This document shows, in pieces, positions 3,263 through 53,885 of a DNA stretch of 64,000 nucleotides. A program made the translations under genes and the position numbers. Position 1 is the stretch's first letter; every line of letters starts with the position of its first letter. The stretch is from positions 38,750,001-38,814,000 of the forward strand of contig NC_067401.1 in NCBI RefSeq assembly GCF_016432865.1. The letters run 5' to 3'. This DNA comes from Antechinus flavipes. Lineage: Eukaryota. The notes beneath the pieces were generated by a model, which worked only from the letters and a program-made list of their open reading frames with translations, searched no databases and was not told the origin of the DNA.

Positions 3263-11736
<8,474 letters not shown>

Positions 11737-17099: not shown

Positions 17100-18881
17100 A
17101 TGGACACAGACGTGGTTTCCCGTTGGGTCTCCGCCCCTTGGCCACCCCTCTTCTTTCTGCTCCTTCTGGCCGGAAAGAGTGGCCGAAGCTGCCCGGCCGC
17201 ATGTGACTGTGCCTCCCAACCCCAGGCGGTGCTCTGTGCCAGCCGGCAGCTGGAGGCAGTTCCCGGGGGGATCCCCCCAGACACTGAGCTCCTGGACTTG
17301 AGTAGGAACCGCCTGTGGGGTCTCCAAAGGGGGATGCTCTCCCGCCTGGGACCTCTCCTTGAGTTGGATCTCAGTCACAACCAGCTTTCCACCCTAGAAC
17401 CCGGGGCCTTCCAGGGTCTCCGAAACCTCCTCACTCTGCGGCTTCGGGGTAACAGGCTCCGAATCGTGGCCCCCGGCGTTTTCTCCGGCCTCTCCTCCCT
17501 CACCCTACTGGACCTCAGCCTGAATCAGATCGTCCTTTTCCTGGACGGTGCCTTTGGAGAGCTGGGCAGCCTTCAGCAGTTGGAAGTGGGGGACAACCAC
17601 CTGGTGTTTGTGGCCCCGGGGGCCTTTGTGGGTTTGGCAAAGCTAGGCACCCTTACCCTAGAACGATGTAATCTCAGCACTGTGCCCGGACCTGCTCTGG
17701 CCCGGCTCCCAGGGCTGACGGGGCTGAGGCTGCGCGAGCTGGACATCAGTCGGCTACCCACTGGGGCTCTGAGAGGACTGGGACAGTTACGGGAGTTGGA
17801 GATCCACCAATGGCCGGCTCTGAGGGCCCTGGAACCTGGGAGCCTGGCCGGGCTCAACCTCAGCCACCTTGCCATCACTTACTGCAACCTGAGCTCCGTG
17901 CCCTTCCAAGCCCTGAGCCATCTGAACTTTCTCAGGGTCCTGGACCTGTCCCAGAACCCCATCTCAAATATCCCAGCCCGGAAACTTAGTTTTTTAGTAC
18001 GGCTCCAGGAACTCCACCTCTCGGGGGCCCACCTCGCCTCTATTGCTGCTCACGCTTTCCATGGTTTGGCTGCCTTCTGCCTCCTGGATGTGGCTAACAA
18101 TGCTCTTCAGACCCTGGAAGAAGCTGCCTTCCCCTCCCCAAACAGTCTGGTCACCCTGCGACTGGCTGGCAACCCCCTGATCTGTGACTGCCGTCTCTTG
18201 TGGCTCCTCCGGCTTCGTCACCACCTGGACTTTGGCAAATCCCCCCCAGCCTGTGCCAGTCCACTCCACGTCAAGGGAAAGAACCTCCGGGACTTCTCGG
18301 ACATCCTGCCCCCAGGGCACTTCACTTGCCGAGCGGCCCTGATTCAGAGGTCTGGCCCACGAAGGGTCAGTGCAGAGGAGGGGCAGCAGGCGGTCTTCTC
18401 TTGCTCTGGGGACGGAGAGCCAGCTCCTACTGTTTCCTGGCGAGGACCCCAGGGGACCTGGCTGGGAAGAACTGGGCGAGTAAGAGTCCTTGAGGACGGG
18501 ACCTTGGAGATCCGATCAGTACAGCTTCGAGACGGCGGGGCTTATGTCTGTGTGCTCAGCAACGTGGCTGGGAATGACTCGCTGAGCACCTGGCTGGAGG
18601 TGGTCCGGATCACGTCCCCTAACGGGACCCTTTCTGATACCAACGTCACCTCTCTGGGCACCCCGGGACCCTTCTTCCTGGACAGCAGGGGCCTGGTGGT
18701 GGTCTTGGCTGTGGGCTTCCTCCCCTTCCTCACCTCGGTAACCCTCTGTTTTGGCCTCATTGCCCTGTGGAGCAAAAGCAAGGGACGAGTCAAACATCAC
18801 ACCACCTTTGACTTTGTGCTTCCTCGCACTTCCGGGGAGCGGGATGCCGGGGGCAACCGAGTCACTGCCAAACTCTTCTGA
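17100..18881 (+). CDS. LINGO4: Leucine-rich repeat and Ig domain-containing Nogo receptor-interacting protein 4 (593 aa, single coding exon)
   Basis: ATG at 17100 in strong context (gggcATGg), 13 nt after acceptor tcccag|. Signal peptide, LRRNT (SCPAACDC), LRR array, LRRCT ([11 protein letters not shown]), Ig-I domain, TM helix and tail GNRVTAKLF. The ORF-track start at 17064 is a TTG lying in the intron. Confidence 0.97.
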
Positions 18882-20565
18882 TCTCCCTTTCCATCCTCCC
18901 TGAGAGCCCAGACAGCCAGTTTGAGTGGAGAGAAGGCTAGTTGGGCCAGTGCCTTACCCCAAAGGATGTTCTGGAGAATCAGGACCCAAGCGTCCCCAGC
19001 ATGCCCCCGCCCTCCTTGTGCTGGCTAGAGCAGCTTGTCCTCTGCCTCGCTCCATGGACATTTCCCACCGGGAAATGACAGCCAGCTTCTACTGATTCCC
19101 CCCATTCCCCGAGGGTTCTGGAGTGCTGGAGATTTATGGGACGTCGCCCTCTGAACAGTGCAAGGCTATTACCTCCCACCAGCACACAAGCGGGCAATAG
19201 GACCCGAGGGTCTTAGACCCATTCCCTTCTTTGATCACTAGCAACATATCTTTGCTCCTCACTTCATTTAATTGTCAAAACCAATCACCAGAGCCAGTGA
19301 CGGGGCCATCCCAGAGATGGGTCTGTGAAGTCACCACTTGCTTCTCTGCCTCTTTCCCCCAGGTACAGATTCTACAGAGGCAGACACCCTTCTATTGCCC
19401 CCACCCCCACCCCAGGGCCCAGAGCTAGAAAGAGGATGCTCTTCATGGTCCCTGGGATCGAGGGAAAGGAGAAAATGGTGTGCACAGGCACCATGTCTGC
19501 CTGACAGAGGGGGACCATTAAACCCGCTGCCAAAAGGCTGGAATTGGTGAAAACCAAGAGTGATTTTGAGTCTTTTTTCTACCAATCCATTCCCTTCTAA
19601 CCTTCCCTTCAAGTCTATCAAACCTGTCACTTTCCTCCTTCACCTTCCCTCTTATCTATAAGTTCATGAATCCTAACCCTTATTCCTCCACCTTTCTGTA
19701 ACCAACATATCCAGTCTGAGCCAAAAAGAATCACTTCTCTGTCAAGAGCTTCCTCCCTGAACTGGCCAGGAAATCTTTCCTGGAAATTAATCCAAGTTCC
19801 TCCCATTAGAGTCAGACCCTTTCTGCCCCTCACCCTATTCTCCAAGGGACTAGGGAATGAGAAGTTTTCCACCTCTGGAAACATCTGTTGGCCACTCTCC
19901 TCCTCAGCCTTCTTTAGCTGGATGACATAGCTCCTTTTATCTTCCACAAATCCTGGGGAGAAAGAGAATATTTCAGAGAATGATTATACTCCAAATCCCC
20001 AGGCCCATCAGCTACCAGCAGAGATAGAGGAAAAGAGACAAATCTTGGGGCACAAGGAAAGGAGGCAGTAAAATTGGGGAGGGGGCAGGGAGGAACAAGG
20101 GATCTGGAAGCTGCTGGAAAGGAGGACAAGGGGGCTGGCTAACTCCCAATGGCTGCCTTCCTATTGCAGTTTTCTCTTGTTCTGAAGCTGTGCCTGGGAA
20201 GTCACCCATCCGTCAGAAACCCAGATGGAAAAGCTGGCAAGAGAGAGAGCTTATTCAGCTGAAATATCCCTACAGAAGGGAAATGGGGAAATGGATAGAT
20301 ATATGGAGATGGGAAAAAGAGAAGAGAAAAGGGGAGACACAGAGGGACAATGAAAGAGATTGTCAGCCAGAAAGTCAGGAGGAGGCAAAGAATAGAAGGG
20401 GTGTAAACATCTGAAAAGGGAGAAGGGGAAGAAATAAAAGAGAAGAAACAAGCCAGAAGGACTGAAATACACAATGGCTATATAGTTCTTGTATCAGCAG
20501 TTTCTACCCTTTTCCATCAACAGAAGCCTCGTCTTGCTCCAACAAGGAAAACAAATTTCCCCCAG

Positions 20566-20567
<2 letters not shown>

Positions 20568-20626
<59 letters not shown>
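20568..20626. repeat. (CA)n microsatellite, about 29 units
   Basis: Pure AC run. Confidence 0.98.
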
Positions 20627-20629
<3 letters not shown>

Positions 20630-21356
20630 AGATGACCGAGAAGCCAGCAGTTCTTTTTGGTGCTCAGGAGTCACTGTTATTGCTGAATCTACAATGGAGG
20701 ATGCCAGAAGAAAGCGTCCCAAAGCTGTTTCTGTTTAATATGCTCATTAGGAGACTGGGAATCCAGCAGTTTGGGAATGAAATAGGAAGCCAGCGTGCCT
20801 CTGGAGCCGTAGGGGAGGCCACCACCCCGTGTCTCTCTTCCTCTTCCTCCTTTTCCATTCCCAAGGCCCGAGGCAGGCTGTCCTGGCTCTCCTAGACTTG
20901 CCAAGCCCCTCATCTCTCCGTTCTCTGTGGGCAGCCCAGAAGCCCGGGACTCTCAGACCCAGGTCACCCCAGCTGCAATGCAGAGAAGGGCCTGAGCACC
21001 AGCTGCTCCAGGGGGGTGCTATTTCAGGCAGTGCCTGTAGGTGGCAGGGATGGCCACACAAAGGTAGGAGCACAGGCCAGGGAGGCTGGAAAGGCCTCAG
21101 GGCCCTGCATTGTATGAAATGTCATGTGAGGTACAAAGGCAAAGTCAGTAGCTCCACCAAATTAAGTTCATCCAGGAGAGAAGCTGCCTGGGCCCTTTCA
21201 AATAGAATCGTGGGTAGTGGCTCGGTGCTCCAACTTAGGGTGGGCTCATGGGAGCAGAAAAGGGGAGCAGGACTTCCTAAAAGCTGCAACCTCCCAATTC
21301 AAGTGGAGCCTACGGATGGCAAGGACACCAAGAGCAAAAAGAGGAGCAGCACTCCC

Positions 21357-22993
21357 AGTGTGCCCACAGTGGCAGGCTCCATGCACGCAAACAGGGTCCC
21401 GGTGTGCCCACACTGGCAGGCTTTGTGCATGTAGATACACTCCCGGTGTGCCCACTCTGATAGGCTTCATGCACACAAACAAGCTTTTGGTGTGCCCACA
21501 CTGGCAACTTCATGCACACAGACACTCTCCTGGTACCCACAGTGGCAGGCTTCATGCACGCAGACAGGCTCCCGGTGTGCCCACTCTGATAGGCTTCATG
21601 CACACAAACAAGCTCTTGGTGTGCCCACACTGGCAACTTCACACACACAGACACTCTCCTGGTACCCACAGTGGCAGGCTTCATGCACGCAGACAGGTTC
21701 CCGGTGTGCCCACACTGGCAGGCTTTGTGCATGTAGATACACTCCTGGTGTGCCCACTCTGATAGGCTTCATGCACACAAACAAGCTTTTGGTGTGCCCA
21801 CACTGGCAACTTCATGCACACAGACACTCTCCTGGTACCCACAGTGGCAGGCTTCATGCACGCAGACAGGCTCCCGGTGTGCCCACTCTGATAGGCTTCA
21901 TGCACACAAACAAGCTCTTGGTGTGCCCACACTGGCAACTTCACGCACACAGACACTCTCCTGGTACCCACAGTGGCAGGCTTCATGCACGCAGACAGGC
22001 TCCCGGTGTGCCCACACTGGCAGGCTTTGTGCATGTAGATACACTCCTGGTGTGCCCACTCTGATAGTCTTCATGCACACAAACAAGCTCTTGGTGTGCC
22101 CACACTGGCAACTTCATGCACACAGACACTCTCCTGGTACCCACAGTGGCAGGCTTCATGCACGCAGACAGGCTCCCGGTGTGCCCACTCTGATAGGCTT
22201 CATGCACACAAACAAGCTCTTGGTGTGCCCACACTGGCAACTTCACGCACACAGACACTCTCCTGGTACCCACAGTGGCAGGCTTCATGCACGCAGACAG
22301 GCTCCCGGTGTGCCCACACTGGCAGGCTTTGTGCATGTAGATACATTCCTGGTGTGCCCACTCTGATAGTCTTCATGCACACAAACAAGCTCTTGGTGTG
22401 CCCACACTGGCAACTTCATGCACACAGATACTCTCCTGGTACCCACAGTGGCAGGCTCCATGCACGCAGACAGGCTCCTGGTACCCACAGTGGCAGGCTT
22501 CATGCACGCATACAGGCTCCCGGTGTGCCCACACTGGCAGGCTTTGTGCATGTAGATACACTCCTGGTGTGCCCACTCTGATAGGCTTCATGCACACAAA
22601 CAAGCTCTTGGTGTGCCCACACTGGCAACTTCATGCACACAGACACTCTCCTGGTACCCACAGTGGCAGGCTTCATGCACGCAGACAGGCTCCCGGTGTG
22701 CCCACTCTGATAGGCTTCATGCACACAAACAAGCTCTTGGTGTGCCCACACTGGCAACTTCACGCACACAGACACTCTCCTGGTACCCACAGTGGCAGGC
22801 TTCATGCACGCAGACAGGCTCCCGGTGTGCCCACACTGGCAGGCTTTGTGCATGTAGATACACTCCTGGTGTGCCCACTCTGATAGGCTTCGTGCACACA
22901 AACAAGCTCTTGGTGTGCCCACACTGGCAGGCTCCATGCACACAGACACCCTCCTGGTGCCCACATTGGCAAGCTTCATGCCACAGATACACT
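21357..22993. repeat. Minisatellite of about 38 monomers of 42-44 bp with 129-bp and 302-bp higher-order periods
   Basis: Monomer classes B, C, D and E arranged as (B-CDE-CDE)n; the 302-bp period is also visible in ORF-track starts 21492, 21794, 22096, 22398. Confidence 0.97.
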
Positions 22994-24169
22994 TGTTTGG
23001 GGCTATATGATATGCAGGGTTCTAGGACATAAATTAGCTAATCCAATACTTTAATTGTGAAAATGAAGAAACTTGAGTCCCAGAATGGTGAAGTAATCTG
23101 ACCAATACCAAGAAGGAGCCAAGGTTCAAATCCAGGTTCACATGGCGAATGCCATGCTCTTTCCACCTGTCTCTCATCCAGGTTGTCACAGCATGTGCAC
23201 TGTGTGTGGATATGGCTGCACACAGCAAAGTGAGTTTGTATACACAGGGAGGAGAACACATACAAAAACATGTGCATGTATGTTGTGTCTGTCTGTGCTA
23301 CAGAGCAGTGTGTTAGGATCCCACCCCAAATGCAGCATCTCCAAAGAATAAGGAAGCATTGAAACCCTAGTCTCACCTCATGCTCCCCAGATGGGACAGC
23401 GGGATAAAAGGGCATTGTTACTGGTCCTCTGGGCTAGCTCCGGCTCTTTCCCTTGGTGCCCCTCAAAACGGCTGAGTATGTTGCTTCTCTCCTTCCAAAC
23501 TCACCAGGGCTGACCTGTTAAGAACAGATAAAAGGCATGAAAATGAGACCGCTCCCATTTGTTGGAGGCCAGAACCCCTGACCAATTTCTTAGCTTCAAA
23601 AGCTCTAAGTCCTTCCATAGCCAAGAGAATGTTCCCCGGTCCCCGTTTCCTTTTTCTTCCTTCATTCTCGACCCCTCCACATACACTGTCTCCAATTGTA
23701 GCTGCCACTTTCTCCTTCTTCAAGGGCCATTGGGAGGAAGAGCAGATATAGAAAGAAAAGCAAAAGATCTCAGGAATCTATATGCCAAAATTGGAAAGAC
23801 AGTTCACCACACAGACCAACTACTGCTGATCTTTGGAGATCAAGGGTAGGCAGGGATTTCCCAAAATGGCACTAACATGTGAAGTGTTACAGATCTAGAG
23901 CCAGATAACCATCTACTTCAATCCCCTTATTTTTCAGATGAGAAGCTGGGCTCAGGGAGATTAAGTTATTTACTTCAGATCACAGAGATTTGAACCTAAG
24001 GCCTTTGACTGGACTCAGTGGTCTTTCCACTGTTAACACGTCTCTTCAGTTTTAAAAAGAGAATGAACTGAAGAAGTCGTTTAGTCTAGTTTATTTTAAA
24101 GAGGAGAAGGTCAAGGCATTAAAAGGCTGAAACTAACAGAAGATGGCGTATCATCTTCCAAGAGTTTAC

Positions 24170-30618: not shown

Positions 30619-30751
30619 NNNNNNNNNNNNNNNNNNNNNNNNNNNNNNNNNNNNNNNNNNNNNNNNNNNNNNNNNNNNNNNNNNNNNNNNNNNNNNNNNN
30701 NNNNNNNNNNNNNNNNNNNNNNNNNNNNNNNNNNNNNNNNNNNNNNNNNNN
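30619..30751. other. Assembly gap (133 N)
   Basis: Run of N. Confidence 1.
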
Positions 30752-34000: not shown

Positions 34001-34699
34001 CGCAGAGGATAAATTGGAGATAATAGCATTAAGTGAGACTGGAAAAGATTTTCTATAGAAAGTTGTGGATTTCAGTTGTGGCACGAAGGGGAATAAATCA
34101 AGGAAACCAGAGGTTTGTAGGTAAGAACTGATGTTCCAGACTTAGGGAACAGTCAGAGAAAAAGCATAGTATAGACGGTAGTGAGGCACTAAGTTGTTTG
34201 AAAGACCAAGGAGTGAGGATTTAGCGGTGGTGAGGCTGGGCAGGGCAAGGACTAGGGGACAGGACCACTTTTTCCCGGGACATACAGTGATCTAGTTCAT
34301 CCGGAGATATAGGAGAAATGGGATATAGTGCTAAGTGTTTAGCGCTTCAGAAAGGTCCTTCATACTGGTGAGGAACAAAATGAATCCCGAGAAATCCAGC
34401 CTCTCCCCAACGAGTGATGGCTCACTTGTCTCTGATCCAGCCAAAGGTCATCTTATTCTTCCAAGCCAGCTGGAGCTGGTCAGGAAGGTGGGGATCCTGT
34501 TTTACGCACTACCTGGCTGTGTCAGTGTGCGCGAGCCGCTTGATCTGAGTCTTAGTTTCCTCATCTGTAAAAAGGGGCGAGGGGACAATAATACAGCAGG
34601 GTTATTACGAGGATGGAATGAAACGGATCGATGAAAAGTACTTTGCAAAGCTCAAGTCACTAAGTAAGTCTCAGCTGTCATGAGTTATTTGTGCAGAGA

Positions 34700-35700
34700 G
34701 AGGTTGTCCCTAGGAGAGAAGAAAAGCGCGCCTTCTGGCCGCCCCGCCCCCCTCAAGTCTCGAACCTCCCCTCCCCCCACTTCCCCTTACCACGCCTCCC
34801 TCATCGGGGATCCTTTCTGAGGTCTGATCTCCATCCTTCCCACCTGGTTTCTTCCTTGGCCGAGAAGGATCCTCTCCCCTCCCCCCCAAATTTTTAGGTT
34901 TGTTCCCGCCTCTCCACGTGCTTCGACACGCTGCCCAAGCGTGCCCAGACTCCTGGACTTGTCACAACGTGGGGACCCTGTGTCCCTAGAAAAGGGGCTC
35001 TGACCACGACGAGTCTCTCCCACGACATATCGCAGCTGTCCCCTGGCTAAGTGATAAGACACAACATGGGCAATATGCAGAGGACAACACAATCGTGACA
35101 CTCCATCGCGACACACCTGGGGAATCGTCCTTTTCCCTTCGGCCAACCTACTACGAGTCGTCCAAGCTAGCGGGACAACAGGTTTTCTGCCAAAACTCAA
35201 GCAGCCGCAGAGGTTCCGTTCAATGATTGGCCAAATGCTACGCAGAGCGAGCTCCTGGAAACCTCCGATTGGCTGTTTAATTCTCAGGCAGGTGCCGGTC
35301 CAATGGAAGAAAAGGCGGTCCCTCCCTAGCTTGCGGCTCTTATTGGCAGTCGTAGAGGACCGACTTTGAAGCTCACTCTCATTATTGGGCACCCACACGA
35401 GGCAGGTATGTCGTTCACTGAGAAACTCACGGGACGATTGGCTTAGGGAGAAAGTAGGGGCGGTGGTAGGGAGGGAGCAATGGAAGCCGATCGGCCGGAG
35501 AGGACACTGGCGGAGGATTGGATGTGGTGGGTCACGTGGGTGGGCGCTGATTGGCTGAAGCGAGGCCCGCAGTTCCCCTAGTCGGGGTGTGAGGAGACGG
35601 CGACTGGGGAGCCGAGGGGACGACGGCTATTCCCAGAGGAGCGGTATAAGCCGGGGCCGGGACCGGAGAGGGAGATTAGAGCTGGGTCCGAGGGCGTGTG
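34700..35700. promoter_or_regulatory. TDRKH: TDRKH CpG-island promoter with 8 CCAAT boxes, an E-box and GC boxes
   Basis: ATTGG/CCAAT at 35226, 35268, 35300, 35342, 35384, 35437, 35517 and 35550; GTCACGTG at 35531-35538; CpG-rich. Confidence 0.8.
35555..35643 (+). other. TDRKH: Candidate TDRKH non-coding exon 1
   Basis: Immediately after the last CCAAT box and ends GAGCG|gtataag; TSS approximate. Confidence 0.5.
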
Positions 35701-36864
35701 AGAAGATGAAATGGAGTTAGAAAAAGCGAAGCGGTTGGAAAAAAGCCAAGAGTCTAGGGGCGGAGAGGATGAGGAGAGGGGGTTTGGGGAAGATGGAGGC
35801 CTTGGGCCCTGTGGGAAGGGGGTTGAGGAATCGAGAACATTTATTAAGTGCGTTCTTTGAGAAAAAGAAAAGCGGAGGAGGTTGGGCGAGAGCGGGGAGG
35901 TAAAGGGAGGGGCAGGGGAAATGGTGGAATAAGGGTGTGAGGAGGCAACCAAGGTGGGGTGAGGTATGGGGAGGTGGGGAAGGAACCGAGGAGATGAGCC
36001 CTGCGGCCCTAAATTTGGGAGGGCTGAGGGGATGTTCGAGGGAGGCCTGGAAATGAAAGAGAAGCCAAGAAGAAACTGGGAGAAGGGAGCGCCAGCAGGT
36101 GGGGGGAGGGGCAGAAAAGGGGGTGTGTGGGTAGGAAGGGAGAATGCGAAGGCTGGAGTTGGCATGGGAACGGAGAGAGGTTGGAAGTAGGAAGGGTCTG
36201 AGGGAGGGGGCGGGAAGTAGGTAAGAGGTTCTGAGTCTTGTGGGAGTGTCAGTACAAAAGCAAATTTTTATAGTCGCCTTAACCTCAGAAATCATAACTG
36301 CAAAGAAAAGACTCTAACTTTAATATTTAGTGATGCTAGCATAAGTTGGAGAGCCTATTTTTAGTCTTACCAGGGTTCCAATCTTAGGATCATAGATTTA
36401 GAGCTGGAAGGGACCACAGAGTTTATCTAGTTCAAATCCCTAATTCTACAGATGAGGAAACTGATCCCCAGAGAGGTTAAGTGATTTGCCCAAGATCATA
36501 CAGGTAAGAAATTAAAATTTGAACCTAGGTCTTTTAACTACAAAGCCCCCCTACATTTCTTCATATCACATCATATCAGTCCTGAGCTGTCTGGGGGGGG
36601 GGGGGGGGGAAGGCCCCAGGAGAAGTATAGTTGTCACTTTGCCTTTCTTCAGGGTTGTTGTTTTTTCTTTAATTTTCCTTTTAATAAAATTATCACTTGC
36701 TCCCTACCTCGTTTTTGCCTTTATTACTAAACTCAATTATTTGATCCCTCTCTCTGCCACCCTTCTAGTGCAGTTACCATAATTTGGAATTGACAGAAAA
36801 CTGACTTTGCTTTCAAAGCCTGTTTTTACTCTTTGCCCCCCCTTTTTAAAAAATTATTATTATT

Positions 36865-40240: not shown

Positions 40241-43159
40241 AAAGAAAAGCCTACCTAATATCACTGGGAAAGTTCTAAAAAATTTTCTATCTTCAAAGAA
40301 AAATTGACTTTTGTACACAATTTGAGACAGAAATTTTGTAATCATAAAACTACACACAAACTTCAATACAGGCACAGTCTCCTTGCCAAAGACAGTTTAC
40401 CTAATGGTCAAAGTGAGCTTGCTAATTTACTATTGGAAAAACAAGAGCATAGAATCCTCTTATTAAGGCTGCAAGCTCAGCAAACAGCAGTAAAGATTTG
40501 GGGTATTTTTTGGTGGGGAAAGAGGAGTGGGAGCCAGGTTGGGCAAGAATGTATAATGTTGTTACAGGCTTTATAAACACTACAGTTTTGCAAATTTTTT
40601 AGTGAATTACTAAAAACTTGAAAGTCTGCATTTAATTTTTAACTAAGAGGAAGGGAGAGATGCTTATTCCAACGGGCAGGAGTGAAAAACATCCGGATCT
40701 TAGAATCATATATCTGGAGCTGAAAGGGAAATCAGAAGTCAGGTAGTCTAGCACCCTCATTTTTTAGATCAGGAAACTAAGATCCAGATTGGTGTAAGGT
40801 CACTTAGAATGGGATTAAGGATTTGAATCCAGATTCTGCAAGTACCCAAGTCTAGTGCTTTGTCTGTTCTTCCAGATTTAATTCTACCTTGATTATTGTT
40901 GTGGTAGAATTGCTGCTCTTGCATCTGAAATAGGAATTCTATTCTCTTTCAGAGAAGATCCTATTTAAAACTGACATTTTATTTCAGAGTAGATTTTGGT
41001 TTTATCTGTATTTCTAGCATCACTAGAATTGAACCAGATTTTTTGACAATCATCATTGAAGTTGCATTTTTGTGTAGTAGTCATATAAACTAAAGGGTTT
41101 TTCTCCCATACCTGAGCAAATCCAAAGGGAAAATAGCTTTTTAATTTTTTGGTAACAGTAAAACACAACTGCAGCCTGGAGTCTCACAAAGCTGCTTGAA
41201 TTGATAAAAGGTTTTTCAATTGACTAATTGATTTGTATTGTCTTGACTATTCAAGTTAATGGAATAATCTTGAATATGATCTTCCTAACATGTAAACATG
41301 AAACCACATCACACATAGAACTTTTCCCTCTTTCCCTTTTACTACCTCTCCAAAAAATAAACAAAAAAAATGTAGCTATTTTTTTAAAAGGGACTCTTAA
41401 ATTTTTGTGAATACATGATGAACAGAAGAGAAAAATAAAATCATCATAGGAAGATAAATTGAAATTGATTGTGAAAGACTTTACATGTGAAAGAGATGAG
41501 TTTGTATTTTAACCCAAAGGCAATAAAGAGTCACTAAAGCTTCTTGATCAGAGGAACTGGGTCAGAAGGGTGCTTTAGGACTTTCACTATGGTAGCCATA
41601 AAGAAGATGGATAGAAGAGGGGAAGACACCCATTGGGTGCTGTTGCACTTGTTCTCCAGGTGAGAAGTGTTGTTGAGGGTCTGAACTAAAGGAATTGAAG
41701 CGTAGAGAGAAGGGTACAGATATGAGAGATGCTTTGGCTTTAGATGCAACAAGATAACAACTTGATGGGTAGGGCTTGAAAAAGGGAAGGGAACTGGCAT
41801 TTTTATATAGTACTTACTGTGTATCATGCATCATTCTAAGCATTTTACAGATATTATCCCTTTTGATGCTCACAACAAGCCTTCCAGGTAGTTGCTGTTG
41901 TTAGTCCTATTTTGTACTTAAGGAAACAGGCTGACAGAAGTCAAGTGATTTGTGTCTGGTGCCACACAACTAATAAGTGCCCCTGCCAAGATTTGAACTC
42001 AGATCTTTCTGACTCCAGGCCCAGCCCTTTACCCCATTGTACCATCAGTTGCCACCAAGAGCAGGAAATACTCTAATGTGATTATGAGATTGTGAAGCTG
42101 AGTGACTGGAAGAGTAGTGTTCTTGATAGGAATAGGGAAATTGGAAGGCAAAGATTTTTGAAAGAATGACTTCCAATTAGCGCTATCTAGCAGGCGGTTA
42201 GAAACATGTTGGTTTGGGAGTTATCTGCAGACAGGTGATAGTTGAAATGGAGTTGATGAATCATCAAGCGATGGTATAGGGGAAAAAAGAGAAGAAACAA
42301 GAGCTCCAAGGTCTATCCACATATTGGGCTTAGAGCATAAATGATAGTGCGTTAGGCCAGAGAGACAAATCAAGTCATTCCAAACACCACAAAGCTTCAG
42401 GAAGGACAAGGGCCAAGAAAAGAGTGTGGGGTTGGATGACTAAGAGAAGTTGTAGGGTTAGAAGTTCTGTACCAAACTTTACTTTCTATTTCATTCTATA
42501 TACTGATGCAGAGCAATTTTCCTAAGTCTTAGGCTGGATATCTACATGGCACAATCGGAAAAGCCCTAGACTTGGAGCCACAACTGGCCATCTCAGACAC
42601 TTAACCAGTTGTGTGACCCTGGGCAAGTCACTTAATCTTTCTTAGTCTCAGTTTCTTCCTCTATAAAATGAAGATATCTGTGGCACAACTCACAAAATTG
42701 TGAAGATCAAATAAGAAAGAATCATCTGGAGATGTAAAACATTTTGAAAACTTAATATATTTTAATCTTGTTCAAATTTTATTAGTTCACTACTGCTACA
42801 AATTTAACATCTTAGCATAACTTTCAAAGTCCTCCATAATCTAAAATCATCCTACTTTCTAGCTTTAGTTTGTGTTACTGTTGTTTTTATCATCTAAGCT
42901 CCCCAGCCAAATTGGTTTGTTCATTGTTTTTAAATTTCGTGAGTTTGTGTATTTTTCTAGGGCTGGGCAGCAAAGTGACAAAGTAAGTTTCTTTTTACCT
43001 ATGGCCTTCAGTTGCTTGTGCAGTAAGTTGGGTTTCTTACCTTGGAGTTGGTACTTAGAATTTGGGCAAAAGTATTGCTAGCAACAAATAAGTTTTAGTT
43101 GAAAGCTTTCCTTGTTTCCCCTCCCATGCTTCAGAATGCAGGTTAGAACTTCAGAGAAA

Positions 43160-43283: not shown

Positions 43284-46200
43284 GTACGTATTTTTGTGTA
43301 TATGCACATATACATGCAAAGTTTTAGAAACTGACATATTTCATTAACCTGAAGTAAAAAAAAAAAAATGAAACTTTTTAAACTTAACTTATCATATTTC
43401 AACTGGAACATGAGTCTTTGCCAACCAACTGCATTTCCAGTAGCAAAGAAATACGTTCCTTTTTGTATTGCAATTTTGCCATTAGCGGCAAGTCTTTAGA
43501 CTGAGATACCAATTCATCTATCCTTTTCTAAGAGCTCTTATTGATCTAAAGAGAAAACTAGTGGATTTTTTTTTTTTTTTTTTTTGCTGAGTCAGTTGGG
43601 GTTAAGTGACTTGCCCAAGATCACATCAGCTAGAAAGTGTTAAGTGTCTGAGACCAGATTTAAACTCATTTCCTCCTGACTTTAGGGCTGGTGCTCTATC
43701 TACTATGCCACCTAGCAGCCCTTAGTGGATTCTTTTTTAAAAAATAAATTTTAATTGATTTTTTTTAATTTATCATATTTCAATTGGAACATGAATCTTT
43801 GCCAATCAACTGCATTTCCAGTAGCAAAGAAATATGTTCCTTTTTGTATTGCAACTTTGCCATTAGCGGCAAGTCTGTAGACTGCGATACCAATTCATCT
43901 GTCCTTTTCTAAGAGCTTTATTGATCTAAAGAGAGAACTAGTGGATTTTTTTTTTCTTTTTTTGCTGAGTCAGTTGGGGTTAAGTGACTTGCCCAAGATC
44001 ATACCAGCTAGGAAGTGTTAAGTGTCTGAGACCAGATTTAAACTCATATCCTCCAGACTTCAGGGCTGGTGCTCTTATCTACTGTGCCATCTAGCCGCCC
44101 TTAGTGGATTCTTTTTTAAAAAATAAATTTTTATTGATTTTTTTTTTTAACATCAGCATAATTTCCCCCATATGCCTGCCCTCCCAGAGAGCTAGCCCAT
44201 ACAACAAATGATAATTTGAAGAAAAAGAGAGGGGGAAAACCAGCATAACTGCTCAGTGCATTTTAAAAAAAAAGAAGTCTGAAAATATGTGCATTGTATT
44301 ATCCTGCGCCTGCCAGCTCTTCTTTGTAATTTTGCAACATTCTCTTTTGAATTTTTTTGTGTTTGGTTTTTTCCATTTATATTGTTCTTTGGGTATGTTA
44401 TTTCCTTGGCTCTGCTTATTTCACTCTGAAGTAATTCATGTAGATCTTTCCATGCTTCTCTGTATTCATCACACATAATTTTTAAAAGCATAGCAAAATT
44501 CCTTTACATTCATATGCTACCATTTGATTAGCCATTTCCCAGTTGATGAGTACATACTTTGTTTTGAATTCTCTACTACAATGCAAAAAATGCTACTATA
44601 AATATTTTGGTGTATGTGAGAAATTTTTTTTTTTTTTTATTACCAGTGACCTCCTTGGGATATAAGCCTAATACTAGAGTCGCTGGGTCAAAGGGTATGA
44701 ACTCTTTATTTGCATATTCCTACATTGTTTTCTAAAACAGTTGTACTGGTTCATAGCTCCACCAATAATCCACCAGGGTCCTATCTTTCCATATCCCAGA
44801 TTAGATATCCTCATCTTTTTTCATCTTTTCCAGTATGTTGGATAGAAGATAAAACCTCAGGGTTATTTTGATTTGCATCTCTTATTATTAGAGATTTGGA
44901 GCATTTTTCTATGTTATTGTTAATAATTTTCAATCTGTCTTTTGAGAAATGTTTTGTTTATATCCTTTGACTACTTTTGAGGAATAGCTTTTGGTCTTAT
45001 ATCTGTTACTGTATATGTGTAAATATAAATACCCTATTCTTTTATATATGTATCTTCCTATTCAGCCTTGAGAGATCAATTTCTTCTCATTCATACCATC
45101 CCCACTAATGGACTGTGTTTCAGGGTTTAAATGTATTGCAAAAAATTGGTGGAATAAAAAGTCTTGAATCTGAACAGAATATCCAGGGTAATTCTGGATT
45201 CCTTCTCCTTTTGGAGATAGTTTAGAATCAGAAAACTCTCTAAAACTCAATACACCTTCCTTGTAAGAAAGGCCAGGGATCCTTTCCTGTTTTGATGTCT
45301 GTGAAGTAACAGTCTTCAAAGCTATCCTGTCTGCTAGTCACATCTTCTGTAATCTTTTAAGTTCCCATTCAGATAGCACCTTCATTTGTTGCTATTATTG
45401 GGTTTCTTTGTCTTTTTTCTTTCTGGGATCTTATAGTTTTTGACAGTCAGATGTTTGCCATAGAAGTCAGGGAGCACAAAGGTATTATATGAGCTTTCAG
45501 CATTGGGATTTATCTGATGGTCATTTTATAGAAGAACGTCTGACATTCGTTGGGGAAGATGATATTGAGGTAGAAATGCGGGTACCCCAGGAGGCTGTGA
45601 AGCTGATTATTGGCCGACAAGGAGCCAATATTAAACAAGTAAGTATGTTGACTTTTGTGTTCATTGATTTTTTTTCCCCTCCCCTCCAATATCATATATA
45701 CATACAGAAAATAAGTTGCCTTTAGAGAAAAACACTTTTGGCAAGCTAAATTGCTTCCCTTCGATGACTGATGGCTTTCATTCTAGCCATTATTTCATAA
45801 TGTAAGGCGCTTATATTTAAGAAAGTGACTAAATTACTCAAAAATTTACTTTATAGATAATTTACCATAAACATTAAGTTTTAGATTAGATGATTTTCTT
45901 TGCTACTCAGCATATATCTAATAGTTACCTTCCTCATTTGTCAATTAAAAAAAATTAGAAAAGCAACTTCCCATCTCCTTAATCCAAGTAATTATTAGAA
46001 AAATAAAACTGCAAGCAATTTGATATAGGTTATTCAATGTAGTCATGCAAAACATTTTATATTAATCATGTTGTCAAAGACAATACAGACCTCCCACCCC
46101 AAAAAAATTTAAAAACAAGAAAAATAAAACTTTGTAAAAATATTTGCTTTGATTTGCATTCAGCATCCCTCGGTTCTTTCTTAGAAGTGGATTGCATTTT

Positions 46201-49200: not shown

Positions 49201-52200
49201 TTTAAAGAATCAGTTCTCGAAGTCTCTAGTTAAAAGAAATTTTTGTCAATAGATTTTTTTTTTCCTTCTTCCCATGACCTATTTTAAAAAAAGAGAAGAA
49301 AAGAAAAACCAAAGTCCTCACAACAAATATGGCAAGGAAAACTAATTCCCACTTTGGCCATGTCCAACAACATATGTCTTATTTTCTCCCTAAGCCCTGC
49401 CATATTCATAGATGTACACACTTTCCCTTTTTTTCCTCCTTTCCTCTCTGAAGCTAAGGAAACAGACTGGTGCTCGAATTGATGTGGACACAGAAGATGT
49501 AGGTGAAGAACGAGTGCTGCTCATCAGTGGCTTTCCTGTCCAGGTTTGCAAAGCCAAAGCAGCAATCCACCAGATTCTGACGGAGAACACCCCAGTGTAT
49601 GAACAGCTTTCAGTACCTCAGAGATCTGTGGGCAGAATTATAGGTACTGTTGTCTCCCTTTAATGCTGCTTTATTTCCTTATCTTCTTAAGTGTTTTTCT
49701 TGGTCACTGTCATCTCCATTAGGTGAGATATCCAAAAGATGACCACAATTTTTACCCAATTTGTCTCAAATATAATCCCAAAATACCAATTAAGTTCAAA
49801 AAAGATTTAGAGAAAACTATGGGTGGTAGATTCACAAAGGATTAAAAAGTGGACTGCTCCTCTCTTTAACCTTTTGAAGATAGAATACATACTTTCTCAT
49901 AAAATATTAGCCCTTTACTATAAGGTTTTAAAATTTTATAGCACTTAATAGTATTTAGAATGCTTTTGATAAGCTGATTTTCTATGTACCTCATAACTCT
50001 TCTGTTTAAGTAGGCAGGGCAGGTACTATCCCTGGCTTACAGATGAGCAAACAGACTCAACACTGGCATTTCTAAGGTCATAAAGTTACCATTCCCCCCC
50101 TTCCCCAAAGCCAGGATTAGAACCAATTCTTCTTAACTTGGTTAATGCCCTTTTTCTCTAACTTACTCTAGTAGAGTATTCTGGTTTATTTTAGGACTGA
50201 AAAGTGAAGCCTCCTTGAATGATTTAAAAAAATAGATATATTTAGAATGAAGGAATTAAAACCACCTGAAATTTTTTAAAGAAAAAAAAAAACATTTCTT
50301 AGAGGCTATATTGCCAGGAAAGATTTCAGGAACTATTTTGTTCAGGCATTTATTAAGAACCTAGTATTTGGCTCAGTTTGGAAATGAAAATTTATTCTTA
50401 CTTCCACTGATTTTTCTAGTTGCTGCAAAGTAGTGGCAAGCAGAATTTGTCTATATATCTTTCTGCAGGGAGGGGTGGGGAAACCATTCGTGCCATCTGC
50501 AAGAGTTCTGGGGCCAAAATTACCTGTGACAAGGAATCAGAAGGGACATTGCTACTAACACGACTCATAAAGATTTCAGGAACACAGAAGGAAGTGGCAG
50601 CAGCCAAGGTGAATATTGAATAAAGCTGAGCGTGCATGTGTTTGTGTGCAAAATCTAAATGAGAAAATCCCCTTCTTTCATGACTTGAGGATCTGAGATG
50701 ATTTTTTTCTGTCAAGCATCTTATTCTAGAAAAAGTGTCCGAAGATGAAGAGCTTCGGAAGAGGATTGCTCATTCGGCAGAATCCAGAGTACAGCGCAAA
50801 CAGCCCATCAGTGTCAAGAGAGAAGAAGTGGCAGGGCCTGGAGGAGCTGGGGAGCCAGCCTTTCCTAAGGACATGAGCACTGGCAAGAAACTGGCCCCAT
50901 CACTGGCTGCCAATCCTAGCCGAGGAGGAGGAGATACAGCTGGTTTGAGACCAGAACGGGTGGAACATTCCCATGAAAAAAAGCTCAGTGACAACAGCCA
51001 CCAGGAGGACATGGGAGCCCAAGCCAATCCAGAGATGCCAAAATTTGAAAGTATGTTATCTCCAGTGACAGCTTGATTGTCCATGCTAATAAATGGGGGA
51101 AGACTCACTTGGATAACTGAAATATACAGATAACCGAAAGTATTTTATATTTGTCTTGGAAATGAATCATGTTTCTGAAAATAGTAAATTGCTGAGCTAA
51201 TATTTGTTCATAATTATAGCAGTTCATTTCCAAAGTACAAAGTGGTGGCAAGAAAAAGCATTAAAAATCCTGTGCTGGAAAGTCTGGCAGTCCAGGATTA
51301 AAATATTTCTTCAGATAATCCCACAACTATTTAAAGTTCCTCAAAACACTTCTCATTCAGTATGAGGTGTGATTACAGATGAACAGTTTTTCTTGTGTGG
51401 TTTGTGGAATCAGACTTGTTACTTTGTAGTCATATTTCTTTACAGCATCCCTAACAAAGGAAAGTCCCAGGTTCTGGAAGCTTTTTCTTCCACAAGTGAA
51501 AAGTTGTAGGATAGAATAGTAAATGGGAAACGAGGTATCCTAGTAGATATTAGGCTACAAATCTTGCTACCTGATGTTTTGTTCCCCATCCTGTGGGAGC
51601 TATAACAATCCCCAAAGGAGACTACGTCTGAAGGGATATAAACGTGACTAGAGATCTGAATTATATCATAGCCATGGTGTTGTAGTTGGAAAGGAACAAG
51701 TATAAAAATCCTCAATTCCATATTTGTGTTTTTGAATATTTTTAAAACTGAAAGCTATCACTCCTATTTAGCCCACTTCCGTCTTCTATTAGCCAGGGAT
51801 GTTTTTGTCATATCCACCAACCACAACTGCATAATGTGTTCAGTCCCCAGCCCTGACTTCAGTTTTCATGCTGATGAGTATCTAGAAGTCTATGTGTCTG
51901 CCTCCGAAAACCCCAACCATTTTTGGATCCAGATTATTGGCTCCCGCAGTTTACAACTGGACAAGCTGGTCAATGAGATGACCCAATACTATGAGAACAG
52001 TCAATCAGTGAGTTGCCATGTGGACCAAGGGGTTGGGGAGATAATAAGCCTTGAGGGAAATAAATATCTCCTACCTTTTCCTTTCTATGCATTTTCTTCC
52101 TTTCCCTTTGGGAACCAGTTTTCTGTGACTCATGGATATTTGTTCTTTTCTCTCACCTTTTATCTGATGCATCTATTGCCATTCCCCCCGCTTCCCTCCA

Positions 52201-53885
52201 ACTTGGACAAGTAGCCTGAAGATCTTACCGTACACGTGGGTGACATTGTAGCAGCACCTTTACCTACAGATGGACCCTGGTATCGGGCCCGTGTCCTGGG
52301 TACCCTCGAGAATGGGAATCTGGATCTCTACTTTGTTGACTTTGGAGATAATGGGGAGAGCCCACTCAAGGATTTGAGAGCTATCAGGTCAGTAGGTTCA
52401 GTCATATATATAGCTATAAAGAGGGAGGTCAGATCATATCTTAATTCTAGTTATATCTCATCCCTTTCAATTGGAGACATTGTAAAGAGCTCAATTAGGA
52501 AGTTTAAAGTGGAACCAGTTCTAAGGGGGATAGATTAGATTTGCTCATGTGTTATAGTCTTAAAGCAGAGATACAATATGACTTTTAGAAGATCTTATAA
52601 GATTCTTAATTACCTTTTTTTTTTTTAAATTATTTCAGGAGTGACTTTCTAAGCCTCCCATTCCAAGCAATAGAATGTAGTCTAGCAAGGATTGTTCCCT
52701 CAGGTAAGTTAACCATGTGATTTGGTCTCACAATAGAATGAGTTCCATATAGCACACTGGGAAATTCTCTTTATCTTGTCTGGCTACTTGATAGAACTCC
52801 CAAGAGCTCAGATCACTTCTGCAAAAAAGATAGGCTGTCTCTTGATTTTATTCCCATTCTCAGCACTGACTCCTCTGCCTCTTTCACCAGGTGAACAGTG
52901 GGAAGAGGAAGCACTAGATGAATTTGACCGTCTCACTCACTGCGCAGAGTGGAAGCCTCTGGTGGCCAAGATCTCCAGCTATGTGCAAACAGGAATTTCT
53001 ACTTGGCCAGAAATACACCTTTATGACACAAGCAATGGACAGGTAAGGCATAGAACTCAGTACCTTGGTCTTTTGACTTTGGGGATTATCCTTAATTTCC
53101 CCAAATTCCTCATCCTAGCCTTTTCCCCCCATTTTCATGACTAGCATAGAAAATAAAAAGGTATTTTAATCCTTTTGTTTTTCTCTCTTCCAGAATCTTG
53201 ACATTGGGCTAGAACTAGTACGCCAAGGTTTTGCAGTTGAACTTCCCCAAGACGTGGGAGAAGGAGATGCTGCTGTCCCTGAGATGCTGCAGGATATATT
53301 GGTGAGTGAGCTCCAGTAGTTGTAAAGGATGATACCCTTGGGGGACTCGGTTCACAGCCTAGAGTTCTGCCTCAGGCTCTGGGCTCTCCTTAGATCTGAG
53401 GCTGCTTCACCAGCCTACAAAAGGTGCTTTAGTTTTGCTCTTCCAGAGCCAAACTTGGCTGCTTCCACAGTTGACAGCGTTGAGGCAATGATGTGTTTCC
53501 TTTTCCCTCACCTCATTTACTAACACTTGTCACTTGTCTTTTTTTTACTCCTTCAGGCCACAGAGACAGATGCCTCTCTAGACAGCCTGTTGTCTGAGGC
53601 TAAGAAGAGTCCTGGAGAGACACCACACACTCTCTCATGCCTCAGTTTATCAGGTAACTGACAAATGTTTTCTACCTAGGCTCCTGAAACTCCTTGGTTG
53701 CTGCCTTCTCTCTCTTTGATCCAGAACTGGACAAGTTTGATGAGGTCCTGGCTCTGCCCAACCCAGTACTTTGGGAATAACTTATTCAAGTTGGGTGTTA
53801 CCTAATTTCCCCTTCCTGTCTTTGCTTAGAAGCTGCTTCAGTTTCTGGTGATGATGGTGTCCTTGCAGAAGACGACTTGCTCTGA
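43160..53885 (+). CDS. TDRKH: Tudor and KH domain-containing protein (TDRD2), 569 aa
   Basis: join(43160..43283,45532..45638,49454..49643,50469..50608,50717..51050,51844..52007,52215..52387,52639..52703,52891..53042,53194..53301,53557..53653,53830..53885) = 1710 nt with no internal stop. N-terminal TM segment, two KH domains (IIGRQGANIK, IIGRGGETIR) and an extended Tudor domain (WYRARV...YFVDFGDN). Confidence 0.97.
43389..44150. repeat. ~381-bp tandem duplication, each copy carrying an antisense WSINE1 with TSD
   Basis: Copies begin ttatcatatttcaa at 43389 and 43770; SINEs at about 43568-43722 and 43948-44101, each flanked by tagtggatt. Confidence 0.92.
44160..45050 (-). mobile_element. Old L1 3' fragment
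   Basis: agccatttcccagttgatg...gctactataaatattttgg...gggtcaaagggtatg in antisense. Confidence 0.7.
45532..45638 (+). CDS. TDRKH: TDRKH exon (KH1 start)
   Basis: tttatag|AA ... CAA|gtaagt, 107 bp. Confidence 0.96.
45960..48070 (-). mobile_element. L1 fragment (ORF2 C-terminal part plus 3' UTR), degraded
   Basis: T-rich antisense L1 ORF2 text (gccagtgccagattgttttgattattgcaatcttatatagttt; tatcatctgcaaa). Confidence 0.75.
48190..49020 (+). mobile_element. L1 3' fragment, sense orientation
   Basis: catgaaaaaatactctaaa...aaattaaaacaact...cctatcagattggcaaa...cctttgacccag. Confidence 0.75.
49454..49643 (+). CDS. TDRKH: TDRKH exon (KH1 end / KH2 start)
   Basis: ctgaag|CTA ... ATAG|gtactg, 190 bp. 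Confidence 0.95.
50469..50608 (+). CDS. TDRKH: TDRKH exon (KH2)
   Basis: ctgcag|GG ... AAG|gtgaat, 140 bp. Confidence 0.96.
50717..51050 (+). CDS. TDRKH: TDRKH linker exon (HLILEKVSEDEELRKR...MPKFE)
   Basis: gtcaag|CAT ... GAAA|gtatgt, 334 bp. Confidence 0.94.
51844..52007 (+). CDS. TDRKH: TDRKH exon (extended Tudor N-part)
   Basis: gttcag|TC ... TCA|gtgagt, 164 bp. Confidence 0.95.
52215..52387 (+). CDS. TDRKH: TDRKH exon (Tudor core)
   Basis: aagtag|CCT ... TCAG|gtcagt, 173 bp. Confidence 0.95.
52639..52703 (+). CDS. TDRKH: TDRKH exon (SDFLSLPFQAIECSLARIVPS)
   Basis: tttcag|G ... TCAG|gtaagt, 65 bp. Confidence 0.96.
52891..53042 (+). CDS. TDRKH: TDRKH exon (EQWEEEALDEF...DTSNGQ)
   Basis: caccag|GT ... 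CAG|gtaagg, 152 bp. Confidence 0.96.
53194..53301 (+). CDS. TDRKH: TDRKH exon (NLDIGLELVRQGFAVELP...QDIL)
   Basis: ttccag|AAT ... TTG|gtgagt, 108 bp. Confidence 0.94.
53557..53653 (+). CDS. TDRKH: TDRKH exon (ATETDASL...SCLSLS)
   Basis: cttcag|GCC ... TCAG|gtaact, 97 bp. Confidence 0.94.
53830..53885 (+). CDS. TDRKH: TDRKH terminal coding exon (EAASVSGDDGVLAEDDLL*)
   Basis: gcttag|AA ... TGA at 53883-53885. Confidence 0.92.

What the first reader, a model, noticed from the sequence alone, without database searches (positions are those of the whole stretch)
21357..22993. 1.6-kb minisatellite with three-tier higher-order structure between LINGO4 and TDRKH
Seen in sequence: about 38 related monomers fall into classes B (44 bp, ggtgtgcccacactggcaggctttgtgcatgtagatacactcc(c/t)), C (44), D (43) and E (42). 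CDE forms a 129-bp trimer, and B-CDE-CDE forms a 302-bp unit at 21401, 21703, 22005 and 22522. A rearranged B-C-D-E-E unit sits at 22307, with diverged monomers at both edges. Diagnostic variants record the history: the second D of each unit has cac(a/g)cacac where the first has catgcacac; units 1-2 share aagctttt; units 3-4 share gatagtc. This is satellite-like HOR organisation in a gene-dense euchromatic interval. I do not recall an equivalent array at the human locus. Inference: a young, probably lineage-specific VNTR that could be transcribed (LINGO4 read-through or a TDRKH-divergent lncRNA) or act as a multimerised protein-binding or methylation element about 12 kb upstream of a piRNA-pathway promoter.
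Basis: partly seen in the sequence, partly recalled or inferred. Interest (0 to 1): 0.75.

Follow-up and report, generated by a model that had tools for sequence, protein, structure and literature searches.

The report
Copy-variable nested minisatellite beside LINGO4
A real 1.6-kb non-coding tandem repeat with nested 44/129/302-base periods lies between LINGO4 and TDRKH of a marsupial, but short-read contigs of its closest relatives carry only a 0.2-kb stub of it and nothing points to a function, so it is a fast-changing yet ordinary minisatellite.

Summary
The array spans 21358-22987 and has 38 head-to-tail monomers of 41-44 bp in four classes. They form a 129-bp C-D-E trimer and a 302-bp B-CDE-CDE unit. 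There are four full units, one 215-bp rearranged unit, a partial sixth unit and diverged edge monomers. Full units are 98.3-99.7% identical; classes are only 70-80% alike.

New here: Logan contigs of the nearest organism (0-1 mismatch in the flanks) and of a sister species (about 1.2% diverged) cross the locus in one piece. They skip exactly 1423 bp (4x302+215) and leave a five-monomer stub. A relative about 4% diverged has the interior junctions D-E-C and C-D-E. A more distant one has B and C monomers in another order.

So the locus and its monomer classes are old and shared, while the 302-bp amplification is recent and variable. A copy-number error in the assembly is less likely but not excluded.

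Nothing supports a function:
- no CTCF-like motif
- no strand structure
- no Rfam or Pfam match
- low CpG
- poly(A) signals lie upstream of the array
- the RNA-library contigs are uninformative

The scan has already reported a nested minisatellite of this kind elsewhere in this genome. Verdict: a new member of a known kind, of low interest.

The parts
21358..22987 (+). Whole minisatellite: 38 monomers of 41-44 bp, GC 0.565, CpG observed/expected 0.21
   Evidence: TRF, monomer segmentation
21363..21406 (+). Left edge monomer E0, an E-like monomer that has diverged; present in the short form of relatives
21401..21702 (+). HOR unit 1 (B-CDE-CDE, 302 bp)
   Evidence: 3-5 differences from the other full units
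21703..22004 (+). HOR unit 2 (302 bp)
22005..22306 (+). HOR unit 3 (302 bp)
22307..22521 (+). Rearranged unit 4 (B-C-D-e-E, 215 bp = 302 minus 87)
22442..22483 (+). Hybrid monomer: E head joined to D tail at a shared CTCC. This is the scar of an 87-bp out-of-register deletion (E tail + C + D head)
   Evidence: alignment; arithmetic 7+44+36=87
22522..22823 (+). HOR unit 5 (302 bp)
22824..22917 (+). Partial sixth unit (B-C). G at 22892 is private to the window; X1 and X4 read A
22918..22999 (+). Right edge monomers d (D-like, without the D deletions) and y (diverged, running into the flanking SINE-like repeat)
21397..22819 (+). 1423-bp interior (4x302+215) that single contigs of runs X1 and X4 skip. 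It holds all 462 31-mers that are specific to the interior
17100..18881 (+). LINGO-family single-exon ORF (593 aa; LRR_8, I-set). Taken as LINGO4 from synteny. Its stop lies 2.5 kb upstream of the array
23025..23160 (-). Old dispersed repeat abutting the right end of the array. It looks like a MIR-type SINE core in reverse orientation (family and orientation recalled, not tested)
   Evidence: nhmmer copies at 36414-36503 (E 1e-5) and 40733-40864 (E 0.011); alignment A1
34501..36000 (+). CpG-island-like stretch, the candidate TDRKH promoter, 11.5 kb downstream of the array
   Evidence: Tudor exon at 51726-52214 matches TDRKH structures

Best explanation
This is a locus-specific, non-coding minisatellite that grows and shrinks by out-of-register exchange or slippage between its own 44-bp monomers. 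Its three periods are the footprint of that history, not of a function.

Shown: an old run of about 44-bp monomers diverged into classes B, C, D and E (70-80% alike, mostly by transitions, several of them CpG to TpG/CpA). Relatives also carry a repeated C-D-E trimer. In the assembled haplotype a B-CDE-CDE block of 302 bp was amplified to five or six copies that differ by 1-5 substitutions. One copy then lost 87 bp through an E/D crossover at a shared CTCC. The edge monomers, which exchange least, are the most diverged.

Inferred:
- The five-monomer form seen in contigs of the nearest organism and a sister species is a contraction (first B against last B), or an old allele.
- The array is therefore a copy-number-variable VNTR.
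- It was methylated in the germline.
- It has no sequence-specific role for LINGO4 or TDRKH.
For: - Structure and unit identities.
- Hybrid monomer 22442-22483 and the 87-bp arithmetic.
- Short form: one contig in X1 (depth 32, 0 mismatches in 1940 flank bases) and one in X4 run 20637-21396/21379 straight into 22820/22803. Both skip 1423 bp, and depth over 21489-22699 is 0.
- X1's share of words, 0.82, equals the 0.821 predicted if it holds every short-form 31-mer and no interior one.
- A k=31 graph of the long form must break into 36 unitigs with the flanks ending at 21426 and 22900. The short form gives one unbranched path.
- X8 (left flank 3.9% diverged) breaks where the long form predicts (786-bp against 790-bp flank piece). 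It has gapless pieces for D-E, E-C, C-D-E and d-y at 1.5-2.5 times single-copy depth.
- No function signals.
- Multi-tier HORs built on about 40-bp units in euchromatin are already described, for example the hornerin 39-bp quartic HOR (PMC9584774).
Against: - All comparative evidence comes from de Bruijn contigs, which show presence better than absence. No raw or long reads could be laid.
- If the coded nearest organism includes the very animal that was assembled, a polymorphism cannot explain the missing interior. Two animals of the species were sequenced in the likely source study (PMC9290055).
- The short form in two species, against a long-type array in an outgroup, needs two contractions or a long-lived polymorphism.
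- Absence of function rests on motif and structure scans only. No expression, methylation or binding data were available.
Confidence: 0.7

Rival explanations
1. The array has the long form in all these animals, and the short form is an artefact of short-read de Bruijn contigs (collapse of a tandem cycle). Nothing would then be known about copy-number variation.
For: read laying itself warns that contigs show presence, not absence, and that a filter leaves some records out. Every 31-mer of the short form is also a 31-mer of the long form, so only missing words argue for absence.
Against: - The same pipeline kept 44-96-bp interior pieces in X8.
- Interior words would stand at 2-9 times single-copy depth, so they are not rare variants.
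- A graph holding them cannot yield an unbranched contig across the locus.
- X1's word share fits zero interior words to two decimals.
Confidence: 0.13
2. The copy number in the assembly is wrong: noisy long reads were over-expanded, and the animal really carries the stub or a much shorter array.
For: - The nearest organism's two runs (shares 0.82 and 0.78) seem to lack the interior.
- If earlier notes name the genome correctly, it was built with wtdbg2 from PacBio CLR reads and polished with short reads of the same animal (PMC9290055). One of those runs may therefore be that animal.
Against: - The interior holds monomer types and junctions that are absent from the stub (the 41-bp D, E-C, D-E) but present, gapless and 96-98% alike, in a relative. 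An assembler cannot invent them.
- The units carry nested shared variants and a clean crossover scar, and all four full units are exactly 302 bp with no indels. That is unlike an unpolished consensus.
Confidence: 0.1
3. The array is a functional multimerised element: a protein-binding or insulator platform, a methylation element, or a transcribed repeat acting on LINGO4 or TDRKH.
For: - It lies between two genes, 2.5 kb past the LINGO4 stop and 11.5 kb before a CpG island.
- Array-type monomers persist at the locus in relatives up to about 10% diverged.
- An RNA library of a relative has one 182-bp array contig.
Against: - Relatives carry very different copy numbers and monomer orders, down to five monomers. 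Dosage and order are therefore not conserved.
- There is no CTCF-like consensus, no structure and no Rfam family.
- CpG is depleted to 0.21.
- Poly(A) signals precede the array.
- The RNA-library contigs are equally thin (depth 2.8-5) on the unique flanks, as DNA or nascent-RNA background would be.
Confidence: 0.05
4. This rival concerns origin only and is compatible with the main reading. The array was seeded at the 3' end of an old MIR-type SINE, like other minisatellites noted in this genome.
For: - The right end abuts a dispersed repeat (23025-23160) that has two more copies in the window.
- In the alignment the repeat's homology appears to reach into the last, diverged monomer.
- Earlier notes describe SINE-tail and SINE-head minisatellites in this genome.
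Against: - The other two copies show no similarity to the monomers upstream of the shared part.
- The SINE family was recognised from memory, with no repeat library at hand.
- No other contig in two whole genomes is 85% or more like the monomers.
Confidence: 0.25

Closest known systems
Hornerin (HRNR) multi-tier HOR built on a 39-bp unit (Paar et al. 2011; Romero et al. 2018, as described in PMC9584774)
   Same: A short primary unit of about 40 bp is organised in nested higher-order periods in gene-rich euchromatin. The top tier is tandemly repeated, and copy number was first thought lineage-specific and later found in relatives.
   Different: Hornerin's repeat is coding and in frame. This array is intergenic, its 302-bp period is not a multiple of 3, and it has three tiers, not four.
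Classical hypervariable minisatellites / VNTRs (for example human D1S80, PMC3356730; VNTR review PMC12776774)
   Same: The unit is 10-100 bp and the array 0.2-2 kb. It is GC-rich and locus-specific, with length change by whole repeat units and variant repeats interspersed along the array.
   Different: Most classical loci are described as one tier of variant repeats. Here a strict 7-monomer register is visible. Variation among individuals is inferred from contigs, not measured in pedigrees or populations.
Alpha-satellite higher-order repeats
   Same: The defining HOR signature is present: monomers within a unit are 70-80% alike, units are 98-99.7% alike, and the array edges are diverged.
   Different: The monomer is 44 bp, not 171 bp. 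The array is 1.6 kb, not megabases, it is single-locus, and it is neither centromeric nor heterochromatic.
Nested-HOR minisatellite between RPL18 and SPHK2 in the same genome (earlier scan finding s1-196603)
   Same: It is in the same genome and is also an intergenic, gene-dense, non-coding array with nested periods. It was reported as shorter in a relative and judged an ordinary expanding minisatellite.
   Different: The locus and unit are different, and a sequence look-up found no shared words. I did not re-examine that finding.

Membership tests
Minisatellite / VNTR | Head-to-tail tandem array of 10-100-bp units, total 0.1-30 kb | tested here: met
   38 monomers of 41-44 bp, 1.63 kb
Minisatellite / VNTR | Single locus, not a dispersed or high-copy family | tested here: met
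   No copy elsewhere in the window. In X1 and X4 no other contig is 85% or more like the array, and stub depth equals single-copy depth
Minisatellite / VNTR | Copy number varies among individuals or close species by whole units | tested here: inconclusive
   Contigs of X1 and X4 lack exactly 1423 bp = 4x302+215. This is contig evidence only, and the identity of the animals is coded
Higher-order repeat (HOR) organisation | Monomers within a unit clearly diverged, and units far more alike than monomers | tested here: met
   Classes are 70.5-79.5% alike. Full units are 98.3-99.7% alike. Mean monomer identity peaks at lag 7 (0.92) and lag 3 (0.82)
Higher-order repeat (HOR) organisation | Three nested tiers (44, 129, 302 bp) | tested here: met
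   TRF periods 129 and 302. B recurs every 7 monomers. One fixed site (D1 T against D2 C) separates the two trimers in every unit, so the third tier rests on B plus that one site
Satellite DNA (centromeric or heterochromatic) | Very long arrays, many loci or high genomic abundance | tested here: not met
   1.6 kb, single locus, single-copy depth
TE-internal VNTR | The repeat lies inside a transposable element and recurs in its other copies | tested here: not met
   No dispersed monomer copies. The two other copies of the neighbouring dispersed repeat lack monomer-like sequence. No repeat library was available
CTCF-site tandem array (as noted elsewhere in this genome) | A CTCF core consensus in most units | tested here: not met
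   The consensus CCASYAGRKGGCRS (recalled from memory), allowing up to 2 mismatches, has no hit inside 21358-22987. Window total was 15 against 10.7 expected
Structured RNA or hairpin-forming repeat | Folding energy better than shuffles, or a match to an RNA family | tested here: not met
   z = +2.2 and +3.5, that is worse than shuffles. No Rfam hit

The most novel reading that the evidence does not exclude
The 1.4-kb HOR block is present in germline-derived DNA but absent from somatic DNA of the same animal. According to the paper that earlier notes point to, the long reads came from testis and the short reads from brain, liver, heart and lung of one male (PMC9290055). If the coded runs X1/X2 are that animal, long-read assembly and short-read contigs disagree by exactly the interior. 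That would mean tissue-specific loss, or massive germline expansion, of a minisatellite next to a piRNA-pathway gene. My evidence does not exclude this. A second animal, or a technical cause, is far more likely.
Probability: 0.02. Interest if true: 0.8.

Novelty: new member of a known kind. Interest (0 to 1): 0.2.

Why it matters
If the length difference is real, the locus is a cleanly readable example of how a higher-order repeat is built. It shows an old diverged monomer run, a trimer, a heptamer, a burst of amplification, a crossover scar and collapse back to a stub. It could also serve as a highly informative marker for individuals and populations in a group with endangered species.

It also carries a caution. 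Reference-guided genomes of relatives, and short-read data in general, will misreport this interval.

It does not bear on any open question about LINGO4, TDRKH or the piRNA pathway, because nothing ties the array to their regulation.

Tried and rejected
- Coding repeat: rejected. 302 is not a multiple of 3, the long ORFs are stop-poor repeat frames, and Pfam gives only sub-threshold low-complexity hits.
- CTCF or insulator array: rejected, no consensus match in the array.
- Hairpin or structured RNA/DNA: rejected.
- Widespread satellite or TE-internal repeat: rejected at 85% likeness or more.
- Flanking inverted repeats or an element bracketing the array: only chance-level 22-31-nt pairs.
- LINGO4 3'-UTR membership: unlikely, because ATTAAA at 19517 and AATAAA at 20433 precede the array. 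This was not testable with reads.
- Expression: one metatranscriptome of a relative gave thin contigs on the array and flanks alike, which is uninformative. I had no second read-laying run for a silent control stretch.
- Bacterial promoter/terminator scan: irrelevant to a mammal, ignored.
- Earlier findings by sequence: blank.
- The large protein searches were not used. The proteins were not in question.
- The N runs at 4322-4456 and 30619-30751 were left untouched.

Full report
**Observation.**
Tandem Repeats Finder reports a single array at 21358-22987. Its periods are 129 (81% matches), 173 (81%) and 302 (5.2 copies, 92%, score 2256). Reading the sequence and anchoring on CCCAC gives 38 monomers spaced 44/44/44/41.

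Clustering and alignment give this order: E0 | B C D E C D E | B C D E C D E | B C D E C D E | B C D e E | B C D E C D E | B C d y. A partial sixth unit (B-C, 22824-22917) should be added.

Class consensuses are 70.5-79.5% alike. The four full units differ by only 1-5 substitutions and no indels, that is 98.3-99.7% identity. This is the defining signature of a higher-order repeat.

The third tier is real but thin. It rests on B recurring every seventh monomer and on one fixed site that separates the first D from the second. A 24-nt monomer core matches 25 times against 0.00 expected, and only inside the array.

**Anatomy of the rearranged unit.**
Monomer 22442-22483 has an E head and a D tail joined at a shared CTCC. 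The loss of E tail + C + D head is 7+44+36 = 87 bp, which is exactly 302-215. Unit 4 is therefore a normal unit that suffered one out-of-register exchange or slippage between E1 and D2. This is direct evidence for the process that shapes the array.

**Substitution pattern.**
Many differences between classes are CpG against TpG/CpA at the same columns. Examples are CACGCA / CACACA / CATGTA, CCCGG / CCTGG, and the three states CACGCAC / CATGCAC / CACACAC of D. CpG observed/expected is 0.21 at GC 0.565. I infer germline methylation and CpG decay. This was not measured.

**Context.**
- A 593-aa LRR + Ig ORF at 17100-18881 (+) is a LINGO-family protein. I take it as LINGO4 from synteny with TDRKH.
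- The Tudor exon at 51726-52214 (+) has TDRKH as its best solved relatives.
- A CpG-island-like stretch lies at 34501-36000. The array therefore sits 2.5 kb past the LINGO4 stop and 11.5 kb before the likely TDRKH promoter. Both genes are on the + strand.
- ATTAAA at 19517 and AATAAA at 20433 precede the array.
- The right end abuts an old dispersed repeat (23025-23160) that has two more copies in the window. From memory it looks like a MIR-type SINE core in reverse orientation, but that was not tested. The other copies carry no monomer-like sequence.

**Relatives (the main new result).**
The run index lists six coded organisms with falling word shares: A 0.82/0.78, B 0.59, C 0.51-0.55, D 0.38, E 0.23, F 0.11. 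I laid Logan contigs of four runs on 20400-24000.

- *X1 (organism A).* One 4237-bp contig at single-copy depth matches 20637-21396 and then continues directly at 22820-24000. It has 0 mismatches in the flanks and one in the array (22892).
- *X4 (organism C).* One 4215-bp contig does the same, with about 1.2% mismatches.
- *Both.* They skip 1423 bp = 4x302+215, and no other contig of either run lies on 21489-22699.

Three checks say this is a real short form rather than a collapse:
1. The short form holds 2120 of the 2582 distinct 31-mers of the stretch, or 0.821. That is X1's reported share.
2. A k=31 graph of the long form must fall into 36 unitigs, with the flanks ending at 21426 and 22900. 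The short form is one unbranched path.
3. The same pipeline kept 44-96-bp interior pieces in X8.

*X8 (organism E, left flank 3.9% diverged).* It breaks its left-flank contig where the long form predicts (786 against 790 bp). It has gapless pieces for D-E, E-C, C-D-E and d-y at 1.5-2.5 times single-copy depth. The 41-bp D monomer and the repeated CDE trimer therefore predate the split from E.

*X19 (organism F, an RNA library).* It has a 182-bp contig that reads B-C-B-B with about 11% mismatches. B and C types are older still, and the order differs there.

**Reading.**
The locus and its monomer classes are old. The trimer is shared. The 302-bp amplification is seen only in the window. The stub E0-B-C-d-y in A and C is best read as a contraction (first B against last B gives exactly this product, whatever the copy number) or as an old allele.

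The two trimers of a unit differ by 0.8-3%, while the flanks differ by 3.9% from organism E. That fits concerted evolution.

**Caveat on identity.**
Earlier AI notes name the genome as the yellow-footed antechinus. I did not verify this. The paper on that assembly (PMC9290055) gives these facts:
- PacBio CLR reads came from the testis of one male.
- The assembly used wtdbg2 and was polished with short reads from that male's somatic tissues.
- A second male was also sequenced.
- Short reads were made for two more antechinus species and Murexia.
- Two A. stuartii animals came from another study.

This layout resembles the coded studies, so run X1 or X2 may be the assembled animal. If so, polymorphism cannot explain the missing interior. 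The remaining choices would be an assembly error, a contig artefact or a tissue difference.

Against an assembly error: the interior holds sequence types that the stub lacks but a relative has, the variants are nested, the crossover scar is clean, and the unit lengths are exact.

My odds are:
- real long allele at a copy-variable locus: about 0.7
- contig artefact: about 0.13
- assembly copy-number error: about 0.1
- remainder: other explanations

**Function.**
- No CTCF-like consensus lies in the array. The nearest is a 1-mismatch site at 21034-21047, and the window total is at chance.
- Both strands fold worse than shuffles, z = +2.2 and +3.5.
- There is no Rfam family and no Pfam family above threshold in the repeat ORFs.
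- The RNA-library contigs are as thin on the unique flanks as on the array (depth 2.8-5). That library holds 375 million letters of contigs, so DNA or nascent-RNA background is the simplest reading.
- Copy number and monomer order are not conserved among relatives.

I conclude that this is a neutral minisatellite. That is an inference, because no expression, methylation or binding data could be used.

**Comparison and verdict.**
Nested HORs on about 40-bp units in euchromatin are known (hornerin 39-bp quartic HOR, NBPF 3-mer HOR: PMC9584774). VNTR dynamics by unequal exchange are textbook (D1S80, PMC3356730; review PMC12776774). The scan has already reported a 5.6-kb nested-HOR minisatellite, and some 50 other minisatellite notes, in this same genome. 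This is a new member of a known kind. It is a tidy example with an interesting length discrepancy, and its interest is low.

Noticed in passing
window 20568-20627: Perfect (AC)30 microsatellite 730 bp upstream of the array. All short-read contigs of the four runs end on either side of it.
   Followed up: partly
window 23025-23160 (copies at 36414-36503 and 40733-40864): Old dispersed repeat abutting the right end of the array. It looks like a MIR-type SINE core in reverse orientation (recalled, not tested), and its homology appears to reach into the last diverged monomer.
   Followed up: partly
window 23909-23944: A segment of about 36 bp where many contigs of every DNA run pile up (summed depth 224-330 against 32-60) with unrelated loose ends. 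It is a high-copy dispersed repeat fragment.
   Followed up: no
window 21034-21047: Single CTCF-like consensus match (1 mismatch, + strand) 320 bp upstream of the array. The window-wide count is at chance level.
   Followed up: no
window 43384-44145: Two tandem copies of a 381-bp unit, 93% alike, in the presumed TDRKH gene body.
   Followed up: no
window 10455-10514: Perfect 30-bp tandem duplication (2.0 copies, 100%).
   Followed up: no
window 23183-23545 and joint 20853/23646 in run X8: Organism E has no contig on 23183-23545. One of its contigs (depth 42.8) joins 20853 to 23646 with 23 other letters between. This may be a lineage-specific indel or a paralogous piece; it is unexplained.
   Followed up: no
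window 22892: G in the window creates a CpG in the last C monomer. X1 and X4 both read A, which is the class consensus.
   Followed up: no
window 20400-20521, 21043-21320, 23170-23390: An RNA (metatranscriptome) library of a distant relative has thin contigs (depth 2.8-5) on these unique intergenic stretches. I cannot tell low-level transcription from DNA carry-over.
   Followed up: no
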